From Fonticula alba ATCC 38817 (Eukaryota > Protista > Nucleariida), in the NCBI GenBank assembly GCA_000388065.2, contig KB932209.1: a stretch of DNA of 17,291 nt; one strand, 5' to 3'. A model generated the notes under the pieces. It was given only the letters and a program-made list of their open reading frames with translations. It was not told the DNA's origin and did no database searches. Below are positions 3,801 to 17,291 of this stretch, piece after piece. Made by a program: the position numbers and the translations under genes. Numbering within the stretch: position 1 is the stretch's first letter; each line of letters begins with the position of its first letter.

Positions 3801-4527
3801 CGCCGGGAGACGGGGGGGGGGGGNNNNNNNNNNNNNNNNNNNNNNNNNNNNNNNNNNNNNNNNNNNNNNNNNNNNNNNNNNNNNNNNNNNNNNNNNNNNN
3901 NNNNNNNNNNNNNNNNNNNNNNNNNNNNNNNNNNNNNNNNNNNNNNNNNNNNNNNNNNNNNNNNNNNNNNNNNNNNNNNNNNNNNNNNNNNNNNNNNNNN
4001 NNNNNNNNNNNNNNNNNNNNNNNNNNNNNNNNNNNNNNNNNNNNNNNNNNNNNNNNNNNNNNNNNNNNNNNNNNNNNNNNNNNNNNNNNNNNNNNNNNNN
4101 NNNNNNNNNNNNNNNNNNNNNNNNNNNNNNNNNNNNNNNNNNNNNNNNNNNNNNNNNNNNNNNNNNNNNNNNNNNNNNNNNNNNNNNNNNNNNNGGGGGG
4201 GGGGGGCAGCAGAAGGGATCCATGGTCAGATGGAAGGGCGGCGACACCTGACTGGGGGAGAGCGAGGCAGAAATGCCGGAGGAGGGGGGAGGGGAGGCAA
4301 GGGGCGCAGACAGCCAGACAACGCACGCGCTCAGTGGTAAGGACCTCCATGACAGCATTCCGGCGCTTGGCGGCGCGTGTCTCCTCTGGCGAGAGCGCCG
4401 ACTGTGACGGGGCATCTGACTCGATGTCCAGCGCCTCGGAGCTGCCGTTCAGCGTCGATGGGGCCGGCGTCGGAAGGGACGCCGGGGTATCGACCCGAAC
4501 AATCTTCACAGCCGGGGGGGGAGCCAT
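802..4527 (-). CDS. Dbl-family RhoGEF (DH-PH, FGD-like PH) with acidic/Ser/Pro-rich linker and C-terminal SH3-like domain; spliced, with at least one exon hidden in the N gap
   Basis: Inferred exons: 4527-4327 (ATG...KRRNAVMEVLTTER, DH start), [gap], 3778-3464 (YLMYFNSY...SLVSFFILPIQRIPRYRMLLEAVIKYTDPDHPD, DH core), 3293-2857 (RHFVHVGELHKISRK...RWFFLFNDILLYA...EEWCAHLERAI, PH) and 2728-802 (linker, SH3-like, TGA at 804-802). The visible donors are GTGCGT and the acceptors are CAG. The two fully visible introns are phase-compatible. The ATG at 4527 is tentative because upstream coding exons cannot be excluded. Confidence 0.85.
2519..2577 (-). repeat. Coding (GAT/GAC)n repeat giving a poly-Asp tract in the RhoGEF linker
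   Basis: Translates as EDEDDDDDDDDDDDDDGDD in the RhoGEF frame. Confidence 0.9.
3824..4194. other. Assembly gap (371 N) inside the RhoGEF gene
   Basis: N run flanked by G homopolymers. The N-terminal half of the DH domain, between TTER and MYLMY, is missing and would fit here. Confidence 0.98.
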
Positions 4528-8751: not shown

Positions 8752-11700
8752 TCAGAAAAGCTGCGCGTCCCGCTGCAGCAGGATGGCGTTGATATCCGGC
8801 GAGAGGGGGATGGCATTGATGGCCACGAACGGCACAAGCTGGTTGTGAAGCGACCGGATGTGGCTCAGGTACTGTGGCAGTATGCATAGACATGCCCATC
8901 ATGCATATGGACCACAGCGAGGTTGGAGGAGATGGGGCCATGGGTGTGGTGGGGGCACATACGGGCGCGCGCGCGCGCGTGCGTGTGGTTAGGAAAGATG
9001 GGCCTCACATGGCAGAAGGGCGGCAGCCAAGGAATCGGGCAGTTGGACGCCTGAATTCAGGGAGGGGGGAGCACGCACGCTTTGCAGAGCCGGGTCCGGA
9101 CGCCCGGTCAGCTGGAAGTACTTCTTGGCCAACAGGTTGCTGGTCAGACTAACAAGCGACGGCATGTGACGAGAGATGAAGGGGTTCTTCGAGGCGACGA
9201 GGGCCGCGTCCGAGAGGCGCAGTCGACTGGCCGCATCGGCGGTTGAGTCCTGCGTGGGCAGGGCAATCGGCGAGAATGGCACCGTCTCCAGGAGCCCGAG
9301 CGCCCCATCGAGGTTGCCCTCGCGCTCCAGGTTGAAGACGCTGCTGATGGACACCAGGTGCTGCAAGGTGGCGATGCGGTCGGTGAGCTCCGCGCTGCGG
9401 CTCAGCCGGCTGAGAGTCTCGATGACGCTGCGAACAATCAGACAGGTAGACAGGGGTCAGCCAAAAGAGGGGAGCGGAAAGAGAGAGAGAGAGAGACGCC
9501 GAAGAGGACAGGGGAAGAGAAGAGGAAGGCCACAAATGGCCGCAAAGGACCCGCGACGCACCCTCGCGCCTCGGCCAGAGTCTCCTCGGGCACGGCATTC
9601 AGGTCACCCAGCAGCAGGCACATGAGGTCCACCGTGCGCACGAAGTCCCCGGCAAGATAGGCCAGGCGCACGGCCAGGTCCAGACGGCCCTGAAGCTGGG
9701 CCGTCTGCGACGCGGCCGACGCCAGACGGTACGCCATGACCGCGCGGCTGGGCGCCCCGCCAGTGGTCCCGACCGTCATCGGGTCCAGGAACAGCTCGCC
9801 ATACTTCTCGATGAGGCCGACAGTCCCGCGATCCGGCAGGCCGGCCGGCGCGTCGCCAAGGAACTGCTCGATCAGGTGCGGATGCCGCACCAGCAGCACC
9901 TGCAGGAAGTTCAGGCAGATCTGCTCCTCGCCGGGCCCGGCCCCGGCGGCCAGACGCCCCGGGGCCGCGCGCTCCCCGGTCCCCAGGGAAATGAGCAGCA
10001 GGTAGAAGAACGACAGCTCCGGCAGATCACGGAAGATCCCGCTCGACAGGTACCCCATCAGCATGCCGGCAAAGTCCAGGGCCATCTCGGCCGAGGGGAG
10101 TCGGGCTCCGGCCACGGCCGGGCCGGACCCATTGGTCCTGCCGGCCCCCGGGGCCGGGACCAACACCGACCCGGAGCCCGCCCCGCCGAAGGCCGACGAC
10201 GTGGCTCCGAGCACCGACTGGCCGAGGGCCGCGCTGGCCCACGATGAAGCCAAGGCACCGTGCGCCGGGCTGCCATCGGGCCGATGGGCACCGCCGTCAC
10301 CGGTGGCGGCCGTCGCCGCCGGGGCCCGCTCCAGAAGCCCATGGTACACCAGGCACACGGCCAGATGGAAGGCATCATCCAGGTGCCCGGGCGTGGACCA
10401 CAGGTAGTCCACCGCCTGCGGGAAGAGACCACACAGGAGCAGCACCTGCAGGTAGTTGGTCGGGTTGACGCCGTGGTCGCTGAAATGGTCGGCCCCCACA
10501 CGCAGGACACGCTTTTGCAATGCCGCCAGAGATGGCAAGGCGGTCTCCTTTCGGATCATGGCCAGCTGCAGCCACAGGTAGTCTTCGGTGGTGGCGATGA
10601 CCCCCGGGCTGAGGCTGGTGTCCAGCTGGCAAATCAGCCGGTAAACCGCCGTCCGGAAGACATCGCGCTGGGGCCGGCGGGCGAATTGCTGCTGGGCCAG
10701 CCCCTGCGAGTCGCGCGACAACTGCCGCAGACGCCCGCCAGCGGTCGAGGCGCCTCCGGCCGTCTGCCCGGCAGAATGGATGTACTCGTGGAGGAGCCCG
10801 GCGAACTCCGGCTCCTCGCGGACCAGCGGCGCACAGGCGGGGCTCCGCACATAGGCCTCGGCCAGGTCGAACTTGCCGCACCGCAGCAGGTAGTAGATCT
10901 GCGGCCAGAAGAATTCCCCGCCCTCCTGCTCCAGCGACGGCAGAATCGACACGTCGGTGGCCACCAGCGACCGAACAAACGCCCGGACCAGATGGTCGAA
11001 GCCCAATTCACCCCCGGGCAGGGTCTGCCGGAGGGTCTCATCCAGGCACCGGCGGATGTACTCGCAGTACCTGTGCGCCGCAGGAACGCAGGCGGGAAAT
11101 GCGCGGACAAACGGCGCGCGCGCGCGTAGTCGACCATGGGCGGGTCAGCGGGCGGCTTGGGGAGAGGGGAAAGGGAAAACCAAGAGGGATGGTCAGGGGC
11201 CCAGGACCGAGCGAGCGTACTTCTTCTCCAGGAAGGTCAGAGCAGCCGAGACCAAGTATACCGGCCTGTGTGTGGAGGGCGGAGGGGGGGGGGGGGAGAG
11301 AGAGAGAGAGAGAGACCGTGATAAGGCGTCAGCAAAGTCCGCGCGGCAGCCGGAAAGGGATGGAGGAAGGAGGAAGATGCGGTCAAGGGGCGGCAGTCCC
11401 GGGGAGACATCGAGCGCACGAGAAGATGGAGTAGTCTTTGCCCGCCAGCTCGGGCGGGGCAATCTCCCCGGTCAGGAAGGCCACCAATTCCCAGATGTTG
11501 ACAATGCGGTCGCCCTGGAGCGGGGGGGGGGGGGGGGGGGAAGAGTTTCCGGGAGGGTAAGCATGGGAGCAAGCGAAGGGGAGGCCATGGGGAGGCGCGG
11601 CTCAGCGCACCTTCTCCGACTTCAGGGAGTCGTGCACACTCAGGGCCATGGGGAAGGGGGTCCGCGAGATCCGATGGTTGGTCAGCTGGGTGATGGCACG

Positions 11701-12036
11701 CGAGTAGTGAGTCACCATGCGGAAGCCATTCGGGCCGCCAGGACCGGCTCCGGTGGCGGCCGAACCGCCAGCCACGAAAGCCGACTGCGAGAAGACCCCA
11801 CAAGAGCCGGCCAGCGAGTTGGACAGGTCCCGGGTCAGGTCAGACCCAGTGAGGGACAGTCCTGGGCCAAAGGAGCCGGTGCCAGTCCGGGAGCCGGCAA
11901 CGCGAGCGCCTGGCGCCTCGCTGCCGGTGGCCACAGGCCGGAAGAGCAGCAGCTTGCTGTCGGCCCAGTCTGACATGTGGAAGCGAGATGTCAGGGCAGG
12001 GTGGAAGCTGTAAGAGAAAAGCCATATATATAAATG

Positions 12037-12073
<37 letters not shown>

Positions 12074-12439
12074 CGGGTACGCGTGTGGCTGTGCGAGTTG
12101 TCGCACCCAGCTCGATGTCCAGCTGAAGAAGGAGGCAAACTGGACAACATGGTGACAGGGGTGACAGCGGCGGCAGGGACAGCACATGCGTCAATACTGG
12201 TGGCAAGATGCACGCCCAATTGGTCGGACAACAGGGCGACAAGCGGCCAGCGACAGCCGAGATGGCGGCCAAATATGCAGCAAAGGGACACGCACGGAGG
12301 ACGAATCACGCTGCAGGATGGAAAGGGGACGCTTGACCGAGTGTTCCCGGCGCAGGACATCGCTAGCGCTATTCTGCGCCTCATCACGGAGCCGCTCCAG
12401 CCGGTAGCCGGTCTTCACGGGGGCACTGTGCCCGGACAT
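8752..12439 (-). CDS. NUP93: Nuclear pore complex protein Nup93/Nic96, 8 exons as assembled (about 905 aa)
   Basis: Exons 12439-12296, 12139-12081, 12007-11611, 11514-11420, 11265-11221, 11070-9562, 9427-9079 and 8871-8752. All introns are GT-AG with matching phases, totalling 2718 nt including the stop. Nic96-type motifs: FWPQIYYLLRCG, TTEDYLWLQL, YLQVLLLCGLFPQAVDYL, DAFHLAVCLVYHGLL, FLEKKYCEYI...PGG, and a C-terminus (LVPFVAINAIPLSPDINAILLQRDAQLF) resembling that of Nup93. The 5' exon set appears incomplete in this copy. Confidence 0.9.
12037..12075 (+). repeat. Compound (TG)n(CG)n microsatellite filling most of a 73-nt NUP93 intron
   Basis: gtgtgtgt...gtgtgcgcgcgcgcg lies within intron 12080-12008. 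Confidence 0.9.
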
Positions 12440-12613
12440 GGCGGACACTGGCGGATGGAAGGGGAAGAGAGAGAGAGAAAGAGCGCGTGTAAGGAAAAGG
12501 ATGGGGAGACGAAGGCAGCTTTTGCTGTTACTGTTCTCGAGCGACCCCTCACTCGGACCACAGGGAGTGCAGAGAAGGGACTCGAATCGGCGCGCACACC
12601 GGGGCGGAGCAAG

Positions 12614-12646
<33 letters not shown>

Positions 12647-13254
12647 GCGCACTAAAAAGGGAAGGACAGGCGGGAGGGGACGGGAAGGAGAGCAGACAAG
12701 CGGGCAAGAGCGCCGGCTGGAGAGAGGAAGAGGCGCAAGCAGCAATGGAGGAAAGAGGGGGGGAGGGAGGTGGGTACATGTCTGCCCGGACCAGGGCCGG
12801 AAGTGGGGCCTCGGAAAAGGCCCTGGCTTTCACCCACTGAAGCCACTCGAGGGGGGGGGGGGGGGGAAAGCAAGAGACAAAGAGACGAAGAGAGTGTCGT
12901 TGTGAATGAGCCCGAGACAGGGTCCCAGGAGAAGGAGGCCGAGGCCGAGAGGTAAACCCCCGGCAGCGCTCTCCGTCGCCAATTGGCGGGCTCCATGCAC
13001 AACGCCACGCTTATCACCCCAACACGACACCGGCCGGCGCGGCGGGGGGGCGATGTGGCGTGGCCGCGCGCTCGCGTCGTTTCCCCGCCCCCGCCCCCCG
13101 CCGGCAGGGTCTAGCATCTAGGTAGGGCCAGTAGTCCACTTCGTTGGCAGCTATCGACACCCAGCTCCCGCCGGAGGAGCGCGCATGGTCGTGTGCGTGG
13201 GTGTCTGCCAATTTCGCCGGATCGCGCACGCGCGTCCCGACGCCCCCCCCCCCC
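12130..13254 (+). repeat. Direct repeat copy 1 (at least 1125 bp)
   Basis: Matches 16167-17291 at a constant offset of 4037. The ORF track shows identical peptides shifted by 4037, and the 16-G run has the same length in both copies. Confidence 0.97.
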
Positions 13255-13350
13255 CCCAAGACCCACAACCGCCCACCAAAAGGCACCGGCAAACAAAAAA
13301 AAACAAAGCAAAAACCAGAAACGAACCGCACAACCAAAAAAAAGGCCACC

Positions 13351-13388
<38 letters not shown>

Positions 13389-13551
13389 CTCCTCCCCCCC
13401 CCCCCCCTACCACCAACACCAACACCACACTCGCACATCCCTGCCTGCCGACTGGAAGAAAAGGAGCCCGCCTTCCTCCTCCCCTTCCCTCTTGGCCCTC
13501 TGTCCGGACCTCCCTTCCTCTTTCTTCGGATCCATTTCCCCTTTTCACATC
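12440..13551. promoter_or_regulatory. Divergent NUP93/LAS1 intergenic region (putative bidirectional promoter and 5' UTRs)
   Basis: Lies between head-to-head ATGs at 12439 (-) and 13552 (+). Homopolymer polarity switches from a G-run (12851-12866) to C-runs (13243 onward). A probable NUP93 5'-UTR intron spans 12552-12448. Confidence 0.55.
13352..13407 (+). repeat. Poly-C tract (36 C plus 14 C) upstream of LAS1
   Basis: C runs at 13352-13387 and 13394-13407. Confidence 0.95.
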
Positions 13552-15732
13552 ATGGGAGCGCTGGACGCCGGGATGTGCTTGGATCCGCCCGGTGCGGATG
13601 CCACCACGCCGGCCGACCATGACGAACACCACTCCCACCACCAGTCGCAGCTTGCCTCATTGCGCCATGCCCAGGGCCTCGCGCGCAGCATGCGCTACGT
13701 CCCGTGGGCCGATACCCGCGAGTGGCAGGCCACCTACCACCAGCTTTACAGCTCGACGCCGTGGGCACGGGCGGCCGGGGTGGCGCGTGTGCGCACCTGG
13801 GCCGCACGCCTGCCGCGACTCCCGCCGGCCGTCGAATCGACAGCCCAGTTCGTGGAGCTGCTGGATCGCTGCACCGAGCGAGAGGGCGCCAATGCGCCCA
13901 TGCCGGGGCTCTGTCAGACCGGCGCGCTGCCATCGCCGGCTCTGGCCCAAGCCGGGTCCCTGCGACTGGCCCTCTCGCTGGCGGTCATTCGCTTTGTCAA
14001 TGGCATTGTGGACCCAGCGCAGAAGGGCGGCTTTGCCGGCTCCATTGCCATGATCGCCGAGCGCCTGGAGCTGCCCCAGGTGTTCATCGACATCCGGCAT
14101 GAGGCCACCCATGGGAACACCCTGCCGACGCTGCCGATGCTGGTCAGTGCCGCCGGACAGGCGCTCACTTGGCTCCGCTCGTACTACTGGGAGCCGCAGC
14201 AGGAGGCCATTGCCTCGGCCCTGGCTGGGCTGGACCTGGTGTTGGATCAGTATTTCGAGGCGGCGGCGAGTCAGGCGCGTGATGCGGCGGCGCAGCAGGA
14301 ACGCCGTCAGCAGCAGGAGCTCCAGGCTCTGCGCCAGGCCTTCGGTCGGGGCCGGGCTTTGGCCCGGCAGGAGGCTTCTGGAGATTCGGCGGCCGCCCAG
14401 CCGCCGGCCTCCTCGCCCTCCGGCACTGACAACCCGTCGGAGGGCACCCCGGCCTTCCCGACGGATTACGCCTCCTTCCGGTCCATCCTGCAAAAGACGG
14501 TCCCCTGCACCATCCCCCTGGATTCGGGCAATGTGCTGGCGGTCATTCGCCGGCTGCAGAGTGACCTGCGAAAGGCCTACCGGTCGCGGCAGAAGCACGG
14601 GCCGCGGGTGAACTCGCCAGCCACGGCCGCCGTGGCCGCCTGGCCAGTGGCCCTGCGTGCCTTGCAGAGCCACTGGCCCAACTTCCCGTACCAGGCGCTG
14701 GGGGCCTTCCTCAAGGTGCTGGAGTCTGGCCTGGACCTGGCCGAGACCCCGGTCGATGTGTCCCCGGCTAGCCGGCCTGTCGGGTCCAATCCCGATGAGT
14801 CCCTGGCCGGGGAGATCCTCGGCGTGCTGGTGGCATTTGTGGGGGCCGATACCGGGCCGGCGGCGCAGGCGCTACTGGGCCGCGCTGTGGCCCTGGCCCG
14901 GAGTCCCCCGACGGCCACTGGCGGTGACGGAGGCGCCCGCTTCCGCGGGGACCTGGCCGCTCTGCTGGCTCAGGTGGCCACTCTGGCCGGGACCGGCACA
15001 CACCGTGCTTTGGCCACTCAGGCACAGGAACTGCTCGGGCAAATGCCCGCCCTCGAGCCCGCTGGAAGCGCCCCATCGCAGAGCTCCTCCACTCGGCCGG
15101 ATGTCGTCAGTCGGGCCATCAGCTCGCAACTAAGCCGCCTTGCGGCCTTGGAGGCCCGGCTACCGGGGACCATGTCGGCGCCGGGGGCCCGGGCACCGGC
15201 TGTCCCGGATACCCCCGCCCCAACGCCGGCCAGCTCGAGCCCGGTGGTTATGGCATCGCCGCGCGGCCTTTGGGAGGAGGTGCCCGACTGGCAGCCGGCT
15301 CCGCTGGGCAGCTGCTCGGGCTTTTTCGACAGCGCCACCATGTTCGATCTACCGGCTCACTGTTCGGACTTTTGGCGACAAGTGGACGCCGAGCGGGCCG
15401 CTGCCGCTGCTGCCGCCGCCGCCGCCGCCGCTGCTGCTGCTGCTGCTGGCGATGCCACTGCCGCCATCGCCCCCAGAATCGACCCCTCGTGCACCTCCAC
15501 TGGTACGTCCATGGTGCTTGCTCCGGTTGCACTCCGACGGGCGAGTGGGGCGCACTTCTTTTCTTTTTTTTTCCCCTCGACCTCCGCCTCTCCCCCGACC
15601 CGGGCCCGCATTTGCCCTGGCTCTGACCGACATCCCCATTCAGACTCGGAGTCCCGACACCGGAGCACGTCGCCGCGGACCGAGACTGCCGGCCCGAAGC
15701 CTGTGGCAGTAAGGTCGATCGACCTGCTGTGA
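13552..15732 (+). CDS. LAS1: Las1 family HEPN endoribonuclease (pre-rRNA ITS2 C2 cleavage, Grc3/Nol9 partner), about 679 aa if the 3' intron is spliced
   Basis: Las1 domain motifs VPWADTREWQATYHQLY, RVRTWAAR..LPPAVESTA, LRLALSLAVIRFVNGIVDPAQ, IAERLELPQVFIDIRHEATHGNTLPTL and ALTWLRSYYW. HEPN RxxxxH motif RHEATH at 14095-14112. Las1-type C-terminal tail WEEVPDWQPAPLG at 15271-15309. First in-frame ATG at 13552. Probable intron 15503-15643 (GTACGT...CTGAC...CAG). Confidence 0.92.
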   Translation: MGALDAGMCLDPPGADATTPADHDEHHSHHQSQLASLRHAQGLARSMRYVPWADTREWQATYHQLYSSTPWARAAGVARVRTWAARLPRLPPAVESTAQFVELLDRCTEREGANAPMPGLCQTGALPSPALAQAGSLRLALSLAVIRFVNGIVDPAQKGGFAGSIAMIAERLELPQVFIDIRHEATHGNTLPTLPMLVSAAGQALTWLRSYYWEPQQEAIASALAGLDLVLDQYFEAAASQARDAAAQQERRQQQELQALRQAFGRGRALARQEASGDSAAAQPPASSPSGTDNPSEGTPAFPTDYASFRSILQKTVPCTIPLDSGNVLAVIRRLQSDLRKAYRSRQKHGPRVNSPATAAVAAWPVALRALQSHWPNFPYQALGAFLKVLESGLDLAETPVDVSPASRPVGSNPDESLAGEILGVLVAFVGADTGPAAQALLGRAVALARSPPTATGGDGGARFRGDLAALLAQVATLAGTGTHRALATQAQELLGQMPALEPAGSAPSQSSSTRPDVVSRAISSQLSRLAALEARLPGTMSAPGARAPAVPDTPAPTPASSSPVVMASPRGLWEEVPDWQPAPLGSCSGFFDSATMFDLPAHCSDFWRQVDAERAAAAAAAAAAAAAAAAAGDATAAIAPRIDPSCTSTGTSMVLAPVALRRASGAHFFSFFFPSTSASPPTRARICPGSDRHPHSDSESRHRSTSPRTETAGPKPVAVRSIDLL
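15397..15447 (+). repeat. Coding (GCC/GCT)n repeat giving about 17 Ala near the Las1 C-terminus
   Basis: gccgctgccgctgctgccgccgcc...gctgct in the LAS1 frame. Confidence 0.9.
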
Positions 15733-15773
15733 TGGAACTCCACATTGATGGAGCCCTCATTGCTTCCCCCCCC

Positions 15774-15783
15774 NNNNNNNNNN
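15774..15783. other. Assembly gap (10 N) between a C-run and a 21-G run
   Basis: N run directly visible. It joins the LAS1 3' flank to NUP93 intron sequence. Confidence 0.98.
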
Positions 15784-15898
15784 GGGGGGGGGGGGGGGGG
15801 GGGGAAGAGTGGTTAGCGCACTCGCAACACGGCCAGTTCAGTGTGGCAAAAGGGATGACAGCAAAAGGAAGAGAAACGATCACGGGGCAGACACATAC

Positions 15899-16476
15899 AT
15901 CGACATCGGTCTCGGACGTATGGAAGGTCGACGGCGAGATGTCGGCGGGAACCTGAAGGGATGAAAGGGTGCGCTGCTGCTTGTCCAGATCAACTCCGCC
16001 CATGGCCAGGAAGACGCGGCTGTGTAACGGTCACAGAGGAGAGGTGGGAGAGGGGGCAAATGCATGTGGGTGTGTGTGTGTGTGTGTCTATGGGGTCAAT
16101 GGCGGCCATGCAAGCGTGCGAGCAATGGCAGACAGACGCACCCGGTGCTTCCTGATCCGGAGAAGGAGGAGGCAAACTGGACAACATGGTGACAGGGGTG
16201 ACAGCGGCGGCAGGGACAGCACATGCGTCAATACTGGTGGCAAGATGCACGCCCAATTGGTCGGACAACAGGGCGACAAGCGGCCAGCGACAGCCGAGAT
16301 GGCGGCCAAATATGCAGCAAAGGGACACGCACGGAGGACGAATCACGCTGCAGGATGGAAAGGGGACGCTTGACCGAGTGTTCCCGGCGCAGGACATCGC
16401 TAGCGCTATTCTGCGCCTCATCACGGAGCCGCTCCAGCCGGTAGCCGGTCTTCACGGGGGCACTGTGCCCGGACAT
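15899..16476 (-). CDS. NUP93: Second copy of the Nup93 5' end: exon 1 duplicate plus two exons (35 nt, 121 nt) absent from the first copy; partial gene
   Basis: Exons 16476-16333 (identical to 12439-12296), 16176-16142 (FASSFSGSGSTG) and 16019-15899 (RVFLAMGGVDLDKQQRTLSSLQVPADISPSTFHTSETDVD). They splice in frame through GTGCGT/CAG sites and end at a GTATGT donor. The peptide resembles the Nup93 N-terminal segment (small-x-x-hydrophobic-L-x-x-x-G-x-D ... TD[IV]) as I recall it. Confidence 0.75.
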
Positions 16477-16650
16477 GGCGGACACTGGCGGATGGAAGGG
16501 GAAGAGAGAGAGAGAAAGAGCGCGTGTAAGGAAAAGGATGGGGAGACGAAGGCAGCTTTTGCTGTTACTGTTCTCGAGCGACCCCTCACTCGGACCACAG
16601 GGAGTGCAGAGAAGGGACTCGAATCGGCGCGCACACCGGGGCGGAGCAAG

Positions 16651-16683
<33 letters not shown>

Positions 16684-17291
16684 GCGCACTAAAAAGGGAA
16701 GGACAGGCGGGAGGGGACGGGAAGGAGAGCAGACAAGCGGGCAAGAGCGCCGGCTGGAGAGAGGAAGAGGCGCAAGCAGCAATGGAGGAAAGAGGGGGGG
16801 AGGGAGGTGGGTACATGTCTGCCCGGACCAGGGCCGGAAGTGGGGCCTCGGAAAAGGCCCTGGCTTTCACCCACTGAAGCCACTCGAGGGGGGGGGGGGG
16901 GGGAAAGCAAGAGACAAAGAGACGAAGAGAGTGTCGTTGTGAATGAGCCCGAGACAGGGTCCCAGGAGAAGGAGGCCGAGGCCGAGAGGTAAACCCCCGG
17001 CAGCGCTCTCCGTCGCCAATTGGCGGGCTCCATGCACAACGCCACGCTTATCACCCCAACACGACACCGGCCGGCGCGGCGGGGGGGCGATGTGGCGTGG
17101 CCGCGCGCTCGCGTCGTTTCCCCGCCCCCGCCCCCCGCCGGCAGGGTCTAGCATCTAGGTAGGGCCAGTAGTCCACTTCGTTGGCAGCTATCGACACCCA
17201 GCTCCCGCCGGAGGAGCGCGCATGGTCGTGTGCGTGGGTGTCTGCCAATTTCGCCGGATCGCGCACGCGCGTCCCGACGCCCCCCCCCCCC
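16167..17291 (+). repeat. Direct repeat copy 2, running to the window end
   Basis: Same sequence as 12130-13254 wherever I compared them. It diverges upstream of 16167 (ccggagaaggagg versus ctgaagaagg). Confidence 0.97.

What the first reader, a model, noticed from the sequence alone, without database searches (positions are those of the whole stretch)
12081..16476. NUP93 5' exons are split across two repeat copies, leaving LAS1 nested antisense inside NUP93 as assembled
Seen: the copy attached to the NUP93 body lacks two exons (16176-16142 and 16019-15899) that occur only 4 kb upstream, beyond LAS1. The phase-0 donor at 15898 is compatible with the phase-0 acceptor at 12140. A full-length protein of about 957 aa could therefore be spliced across a 3.76 kb intron containing LAS1, the promoter and a decoy exon 1. 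Against this, other introns here are 73-207 nt. A CTAAC branch-like motif (15816-15812) and poly-C tract also suggest the natural acceptor lies right at the 10-N gap. Inference: most likely 15784-16166 belongs between 12129 and 12130 (misassembly or haplotype contig). If genuine, it is a recently created nested-gene arrangement of two essential genes.
Basis: partly seen in the sequence, partly recalled or inferred. Interest (0 to 1): 0.75.

Follow-up and report, generated by a model that had tools for sequence, protein, structure and literature searches.

The report
NUP93 start written twice by assembly
The apparent split of the Fonticula alba NUP93 gene around LAS1 is almost certainly an assembly artefact: a redundant 1.5-kb mini-contig carrying two real NUP93 exons was parked in the next scaffold gap, so the nesting is not real but the public gene model lacks about 52 residues.

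Summary
The window is Fonticula alba scaffold C9:457093-474383. 12130-13254 and 16167-17291 are identical over 1125 nt. Two NUP93 exons (16176-16142 and 16019-15899, minus strand) occur only next to the second copy, beyond LAS1.

The second copy is a 1508-nt mini-contig (15784-17291) between an N10 gap and a 2045-N gap, ending in G21 and C12 runs. In 200 kb of this scaffold, all three duplicates of 500 nt or more at 99.6% identity or better touch a gap edge. N10 is the assembly's floor gap size.

The mini-contig's unique 383 nt read as the natural NUP93 continuation. Exon 1 (144 nt), exon 2 (35 nt) and exon 3 (121 nt) stay in frame. Exon 3 is the best match in 200 kb to the conserved Nup93 N-terminal FLAxGGVD...TFEP...DTD segment. 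Its intron ends in CTAAC plus poly-C, which fits directly onto TCTTCAG at 12129-12123, ahead of the annotated 16-nt micro-exon.

Verdict: one locus, written twice; LAS1 is not nested. Its in-frame splice into acceptor 12140 is not. By-product: the annotated protein H696_05167 (878 aa) lacks at least 52 N-terminal residues. Low interest. Other notes of this scan report similar gap-edge duplications elsewhere in this genome.

The parts
12130..13254 (.). Repeat copy A, inside the main contig. Holds the first 10 nt of NUP93 exon 2, intron 1, exon 1 and most of the NUP93-LAS1 intergenic region.
   Evidence: Identical to 16167-17291 over 1125 nt. Only two full copies in the genome.
15784..17291 (.). 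Mini-contig B (1508 nt): 383 unique nt followed by repeat copy B (16167-17291). Bounded by N10 on the left and 2045 N on the right, with G21 and C12 at its ends.
15774..15783 (.). N10 scaffold gap at the floor value. C8 on its left, G21 on its right. No frame crosses it.
12296..12439 (-). NUP93 exon 1 (48 codons, ATG at 12439-12437, donor GTGCGT). Duplicated at 16333-16476.
   Evidence: Residues 1-48 of annotated protein P0001 map here. No detectable similarity to the fungal R1 helix.
16142..16176 (-). NUP93 exon 2 (35 nt, low-complexity FASSFSGSGSTG), with acceptor CCAG| and donor GTGCGT. Only its first 10 nt are present in copy A.
   Evidence: This is the only exon length that puts exon 3 in its conserved frame.
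16020..16141 (-). Intron 2 (122 nt), containing a CA microsatellite.
15899..16019 (-). NUP93 exon 3 (121 nt). Encodes RVFLAMGGVD...TFHTSETDVD and ends in phase 0 with donor GTATGT.
   Evidence: Best hmmsearch hit of all six-frame fragments of the window (E 0.098) and of 200 kb (rank 1 of 3744 fragments). hhalign E 2.9e-4 at profile columns 60-81. GC3 is 0.75, against 0.52-0.61 GC in the introns.
15784..15898 (-). 5' part of intron 3: GTATGT ... CTAAC (15816-15812) ... CTCTTC plus a C21 run that reaches the gap.
   Evidence: Intron 4 has the same 3' architecture: CTCTTC, C19, GCTCCAG|.
12107..12129 (-). TCTTCAG acceptor context (12129-12123) plus the annotated 16-nt micro-exon LDIEL (12122-12107) with donor GTGCGA. 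The main contig's suspect junction lies at 12129|12130.
11611..11972 (-). NUP93 exon 4 (DWADSKLLLF...), which enters in phase 1.
   Evidence: Weak hhalign match at profile columns 194-224.
8755..11514 (-). Remaining NUP93 exons, including the Nic96 domain exon 11066-9561.
   Evidence: Pfam Nic96, E 2.9e-47. Exon map.
13552..15732 (+). LAS1 open frame (726 codons), transcribed divergently from NUP93 exon 1. Internal splicing was not resolved.
   Evidence: Pfam Las1, E 1.2e-41, residues 50-215.

Best explanation
There is one NUP93 5' region and one LAS1, arranged head to head. The main contig lacks about 0.4-0.5 kb at 12129|12130: a poly-G run, 25 nt of exon 2, intron 2, exon 3 and most of intron 3. 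The same locus was also assembled as an alternative 1.5-kb contig, G21 - missing piece - exon 1/promoter - C12. Because that contig overlaps the main contig, the scaffolder could not place it there and parked it in the next gap, after LAS1, with a floor-size N10 spacer.

The true gene reads: exon 1 (144 nt), intron 1 (156), exon 2 (35), intron 2 (122), exon 3 (121), intron 3 (about 125 or more), the 16-nt exon or a longer exon ending at 12107, intron (134), exon 4, and so on.

Shown: the repeat, the gap-bounded mini-contig, the Nup93 homology and frame consistency of the B-only exons, and the link between duplicates and gaps in this assembly.

Inferred: the true order, and how the 12129|12130 junction arose (a false join, or DNA molecules that carried a deletion).
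For: 1. Copy B is an isolated 1508-nt contig between N10 and 2045 N, with homopolymers at both ends.
2. The two copies are identical over 1125 nt, including a G16 run and GA microsatellites. That is expected if both were built from the same reads.
3. In 200 kb of the same scaffold there are 35 gaps and three duplicates of 500 nt or more at 99.6% identity or better. All three touch a gap edge. One is a 552-nt mini-contig that duplicates sequence 4.3 kb away, the same geometry as here. Chance contact with a gap edge is about 1e-3 per duplicate.
4. N10 is the floor gap size, so the estimated distance was 10 nt or less, possibly negative.
5. The Y|R junction (16166|16167) is the functional one. 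Exons 1, 2 and 3 total 300 nt with no stop. Exon 3 is the top hit to the Nup93 N-terminal profile and sits at the right place in the protein.
6. Intron 3 in B ends in CTAAC and poly-C. On the minus strand the main contig continues at 12129 with TCTTCAG| and the 16-nt exon, which is in frame with both exon 3 and exon 4.
7. As assembled, the gene would need a 3.77-kb intron, where its other introns are 96-207 nt.
Against: - No reads, depth or long-read data could be consulted, so the copy number of the 1125-nt block is not measured.
- The 12129|12130 junction shows only about 4 nt of microhomology. That is hard to explain as a pure k-mer misjoin, so some sequenced molecules may really carry it.
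- If B abuts 12129 directly, F. alba Nup93 lacks about 31 residues (YLxHxHEQ...IEEsRRxT...F) that are present in all 14 orthologues aligned. That suggests more sequence may still be missing. No such exon was found in the window or its flanks.
- The exon 3 homology is statistically modest on its own (E 0.1-0.4 in open searches).
Confidence: 0.82

Rival explanations
1. Two real versions of one locus were in the sequenced DNA (alleles, or subclones of the culture). One is intact and is represented by mini-contig B. The other carries a roughly 0.4-0.5 kb deletion from inside exon 2 to the end of intron 3 and is represented by the main contig. There is still no nesting, and LAS1 lies outside NUP93.
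For: A deletion-type junction with minimal microhomology (GAAG) at 12129|12130 is more typical of real or PCR-made molecules than of a k-mer assembler. Another redundant mini-contig in the scaffold differs from its twin by one substitution and one 1-nt indel, so variant paths do get written out separately.
Against: The 1125 nt shared by A and B show no variant at all. The deletion would remove a conserved part of an essential nucleoporin, although it stays in frame through the 16-nt exon. The ploidy and heterozygosity of F. alba are not known to me.
Confidence: 0.12
2. The scaffold is correct. A recent 4-kb segmental duplication put a second copy of the NUP93 promoter, exon 1 and intron 1, together with LAS1, between exon 3 and the rest of NUP93. 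Full-length NUP93 would then be spliced across a 3.77-kb intron that contains LAS1 and a decoy exon 1.
For: This is the order as deposited. Splicing exon 3 (phase 0) to the annotated acceptor at 12123 is in frame.
Against: - It needs a non-tandem insertion whose breakpoint lies 10 nt inside exon 2.
- The second copy is known only from a gap-bounded 1.5-kb contig.
- The copies are 100% identical, including their homopolymers.
- All comparable duplicates in 200 kb are gap-edge artefacts.
- The intron would be about 20 times longer than any other in the gene.
- A C-run facing a G21 run across N10 shows no sign of continuity.
Confidence: 0.06

Closest known systems
False duplications from redundant or overlapping contigs at scaffold gaps in short-read draft assemblies
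   Same: The copy is 100% identical and ends at a gap. It sits on a mini-contig with homopolymer ends, next to a floor-size N10 spacer. Two further cases with the same geometry lie within 200 kb.
   Different: Here the redundant contig also carries 383 unique nt that the main contig lost. It is therefore informative (two real exons), not just redundant.
Nup93/Nic96 linker nucleoporin (Pfam PF04097 plus the N-terminal linear motifs that bind the channel and Nup188/Nup205 complexes; the motif functions are from my own knowledge)
   Same: The Nic96 domain is present. Exon 3 matches the conserved FLAxGGVD...TFEP...DTD segment, and exon 4 has the DW...K...F motif at the expected distance.
   Different: Exon 1 has no detectable similarity to the fungal or animal first helix. 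About 31 conserved residues between DTD and DW are absent from everything that was sequenced.
Nested (intronic) genes of eukaryotes
   Same: As deposited, LAS1 lies antisense between NUP93 exons.
   Different: The host intron is not supported by continuous sequence. It crosses an N gap and depends on a duplicated mini-contig.

Membership tests
Nup93/Nic96 | Nic96 (PF04097) alpha-solenoid domain | tested here: met
   window:9438-11003(-), E 2.9e-47, above the curated cut-off. Annotated as H696_05167, nuclear pore protein.
Nup93/Nic96 | Conserved N-terminal segment FLAxGGVD...FEP...DTD, upstream of the solenoid and collinear with it | tested here: met
   Exon 16018-15899(-) is rank 1 of 3744 six-frame fragments in 200 kb. 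hhalign E 2.9e-4 at columns 60-81. The alignment ends coincide with the splice sites.
Nup93/Nic96 | Conserved YLxHxHEQ..IEEsRRxT..F stretch between DTD and DW | tested here: not met
   No hit in the window, L004, L005 or 200 kb of the scaffold. The whole-genome profile search returned only the main exon. The stretch may be truly lost or may lie in unsequenced DNA.
Las1 | Las1-like domain (PF04031) | tested here: met
   window:13552-15729(+), E 1.2e-41, full profile 1-149.
Nested gene pair | The host gene's intron spans the guest gene on continuous, uniquely assembled sequence | tested here: not met
   The path crosses N10 and relies on a mini-contig that duplicates 1125 nt of the main contig.
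Nested gene pair | Transcript junction joining exons on both sides of the guest gene | not testable with these tools
No alternative F. alba Nup93 protein exists in the collection.
Assembly false duplication | Copy identical to nearby sequence and ending at a gap or contig end | tested here: met
Assembly false duplication | Recurrent pattern in the same assembly | tested here: met
   3 of 3 large duplicates in 200 kb abut gaps.
Assembly false duplication | Single-copy read depth over the duplicated block | not testable with these tools
   No reads are available.

The most novel reading that the evidence does not exclude
The scaffold order is real. A very recent 4-kb duplication has nested LAS1, plus a duplicate promoter and exon 1, inside a 3.8-kb NUP93 intron. 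Two essential genes would then share a newly made nested arrangement in an otherwise short-intron genome.
Probability: 0.06. Interest if true: 0.45.

Novelty: not a real feature. Interest (0 to 1): 0.1.

Why it matters
The nesting should not be treated as biology.

The practical points are:
1. The deposited F. alba Nup93 model (H696_05167, 878 aa) is missing at least exons 2-3 (52 residues). These include the conserved GGVD...TFEP...DTD linker segment, which matters for comparative work on nuclear-pore linker motifs in early Holomycota.
2. In the 200 kb of this F. alba scaffold sampled here, redundant contigs sit next to gaps at roughly one per 70 kb. Any "recent duplication" called from this assembly should first be checked against the gap positions.

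Tried and rejected
- Homology between the A-specific (12066-12129) and B-specific (16091-16166) flanks. This would have suggested diverged paralogues or alleles. Local and global alignments are no better than shuffles or natural controls; only the CA microsatellites match.
- An earlier acceptor for exon 4 at 12008, adding FHPALTSRFHMS. It gives the wrong phase with every upstream exon, and its hydrophobic pattern fits the orthologue profile worse than LDIEL|DW does.
- A second-best profile hit just after the 2045-N gap (L004:2451-2684, plus strand, resembling the IERGIDQIExQSRKL helix). It is on the wrong strand, has no codon-position GC bias (0.56/0.58/0.59) and E 2.9, so I take it as chance.
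- Searching for the missing conserved exon elsewhere in the genome with the orthologue profile found only the main exon.
- Looking for a transcript-derived or alternative F. alba Nup93 protein. There is none; the cluster has a single member.
- PDB sequence search with the 40-residue exon 3 gave no hit.
- Literature on the assembly method gave nothing usable.
- I did not build or search a joined spliced protein. Exons were searched one by one, by reference.

Full report
**Source.** The window is G000:C9:457093-474383, part of a 1.08-Mb scaffold of a 31.3-Mb, 214-scaffold genome. The minus-strand gene encodes NCBI protein H696_05167 of Fonticula alba ("nuclear pore protein", 878 aa, P0001). It is not human sequence.

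**The repeat.** Positions 12130-13254 and 16167-17291 are identical over 1125 nt. The first mismatch going left is 12129/16166, and beyond it the two flanks are unrelated. The genome holds exactly these two full copies. The B-only 383 nt (15784-16166) are unique in the genome.

**The genes.** Pfam finds Nic96 in 9438-11003(-) at E 2.9e-47 and Las1 in 13552-15729(+) at E 1.2e-41.

**The gaps.**
- Left of the N10 gap (15774-15783) lies the LAS1 stop at 15730-15732, followed by 41 nt ending in C8. Right of the gap is a G21 run. No frame crosses it and nothing shows continuity.
- Fetching the scaffold beyond the window shows that the window ends exactly at a second gap of 2045 N.
- Copy B is therefore a 1508-nt mini-contig with a homopolymer at each end.
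- The contig after the big gap shares nothing with the window.

**Base rate in this assembly.** I took 200 kb of the same scaffold and listed all gaps and all self-matches.
- There are 35 gaps, most at G or C runs. Seven are exactly 10 N and none is shorter, so N10 is a floor value for "10 nt or less, possibly overlapping".
- There are three duplicates of 500 nt or more at 99.6% identity or better, and every one touches a gap edge:
  - C9:487081-488223 = 493738-494880 (contig end = next contig start, with N10, a 598-nt mini-contig and 4906 N in between);
  - C9:535536-536087, a whole 552-nt mini-contig, = 539845-540395, 4.3 kb away inside the next contig, differing by one substitution and one 1-nt indel;
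  - the present case.
- With 70 gap edges in 200 kb, chance contact is about 1e-3 per duplicate.
- Earlier notes of this scan describe similar gap-edge duplications elsewhere in this genome. I did not test those cases, only the pattern in my own sample.

**What the B-only sequence encodes** (minus strand):
- Exon 1: 16476-16333, the same as 12439-12296; 144 nt, phase 0, donor GTGCGT.
- Intron 1: 156 nt.
- Exon 2: 16176-16142; 35 nt, FASSFSGSGSTG, donor GTGCGT.
- Intron 2: 122 nt.
- Exon 3: 16019-15899; 121 nt, donor GTATGT.
- 35 + 121 = 156 nt, so the frame is kept and exon 3 ends in phase 0. The only other AG-preceded start in that stretch would give a 10-nt exon, which breaks the frame.

**Homology of exon 3.** Exon 3 encodes RVFLAMGGVD...TFHTSETDVD. 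I aligned 12-14 fungal and one sponge Nup93 and built a profile of their first 146 or so match positions.
- The exon is the best hit among all six-frame fragments of the window and its flanks (E 0.098, profile positions 58-96).
- It is also rank 1 of 3744 fragments (340,455 residues) from the 200 kb.
- hhalign gives E 2.9e-4 at columns 60-81.
- The alignment covers the exon from splice site to splice site. About 62 residues precede the motif, against 59 in the orthologues.
- GC at the third codon position is 0.75, against 0.52-0.61 GC in the flanking introns.

**Which junction is the original one.** Exon 3 belongs in the protein between exon 1 and exon 4. The junction 16166|16167 in mini-contig B must therefore be the ancestral, functional one. 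The junction 12129|12130 in the main contig is the derived or false one.

**How the annotators coped.** The public model copes with 12129|12130 by splicing exon 1 to a 16-nt exon (12122-12107, LDIEL) through an acceptor TCTTCAG, and then to exon 4 at 11972.

**Fit of the pieces.**
- Intron 3 in B runs GTATGT ... CTAAC ... CTCTTC plus C21 and then stops at the gap.
- On the minus strand, the main contig at 12129 continues with TCTTCAG| and the 16-nt exon.
- Intron 4 of the same gene ends CTCTTC, C19, GCTCCAG|, which is the same architecture.
- Exon 3 (phase 0), the 16-nt exon and exon 4 (enters in phase 1) are in frame.
- I did not build or search the joined product. Exons were handled one by one.

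Splicing exon 3 into acceptor 12140 is phase-compatible only at the junction itself. The 33-nt exon that follows leaves phase 0 while exon 4 needs phase 1. Read through without splicing, the frame stops near 11845.

**Open points.**
1. All 14 orthologues carry about 31 conserved residues (YLxHxHEQ..IEEsRRxT..F) between DTD and DW. F. alba would have only VD-LDIEL there.
   - Either the lineage lost the stretch, or 12129-12107 is the tail of a longer exon and about 90-100 nt are still unsequenced next to the poly-G.
   - No such exon is found in the window, its flanks or the genome.
   - I lean slightly towards direct abutment, because the main contig's left part stops exactly where a homopolymer would begin.
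2. The origin of 12129|12130 is unknown. Microhomology is only about 4 nt, so it may be a permissive merge of purine-rich contig ends, or it may reflect molecules that carried a deletion (allele, subclone or PCR jump).

Neither open point revives the nesting.

**Rivals.**
- A real duplication as deposited needs all of the following: a non-tandem insertion breaking exon 2 at its 10th base; perfect identity through hypermutable runs; an intron about 20 times longer than the gene's other introns (96-207 nt); and a coincidence with the assembly's recurrent gap-edge artefact. I give it 0.06.
- A real deletion-bearing version beside an intact one gets 0.12.
- The single-locus artefact reading gets 0.82.

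**Limits.**
- No reads or RNA-seq could be consulted.
- No alternative F. alba Nup93 protein exists in the protein collection.
- The assembler used could not be established from the literature.

Noticed in passing
G000:C9:487081-488223 and 493738-494880 (about 30-37 kb beyond window start +29989): 1143 nt are written twice at 100% identity: once as the end of one contig and once as the start of the next. N10, a 598-nt mini-contig and 4906 N lie between them. This is another probable false duplication.
   Followed up: partly
G000:C9:535536-536087 and 539845-540395: A 552-nt mini-contig between two gaps duplicates sequence 4.3 kb downstream, differing by one substitution and one 1-nt indel. It is either a variant path or an error-bearing redundant contig.
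   Followed up: partly
window 11541-11600 (NUP93 intron 4) and G000:C12:93879-93931: About 55 nt of intron sequence next to a long poly-G/C run recur at 96% identity on another scaffold, also next to a long G run, and then diverge. There are only two copies in the genome. The origin is unknown (a small mobile or intron-borne element, or a homopolymer-linked assembly chimera).
   Followed up: partly
window 12107-12439 and P0001 residues 1-54: The public Nup93 model H696_05167 joins exon 1 to a 16-nt exon through an acceptor whose pyrimidine tract is created by the suspect 12129|12130 junction. The model lacks exons 2-3 (52 residues).
   Followed up: yes
window 12440-13551: The divergent NUP93-LAS1 intergenic region is packed with homopolymer runs (G16, C15, C36, C14) and GA/CA microsatellites. 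Exon 1 of NUP93 has no detectable similarity to the conserved first helix of fungal and animal Nup93.
   Followed up: partly
window 3824-4194: A 371-N gap is flanked by G12 on both sides. This is typical of the assembly, where most gaps sit in G or C runs, so the gap lengths are estimates only.
   Followed up: no
L004:2451-2684 (+), just after the 2045-N gap: A short open stretch resembles the Nup93 IERGIDQIExQSRKL helix (E 2.9). It is on the wrong strand and has no codon-position bias, so I judged it chance.
   Followed up: yes
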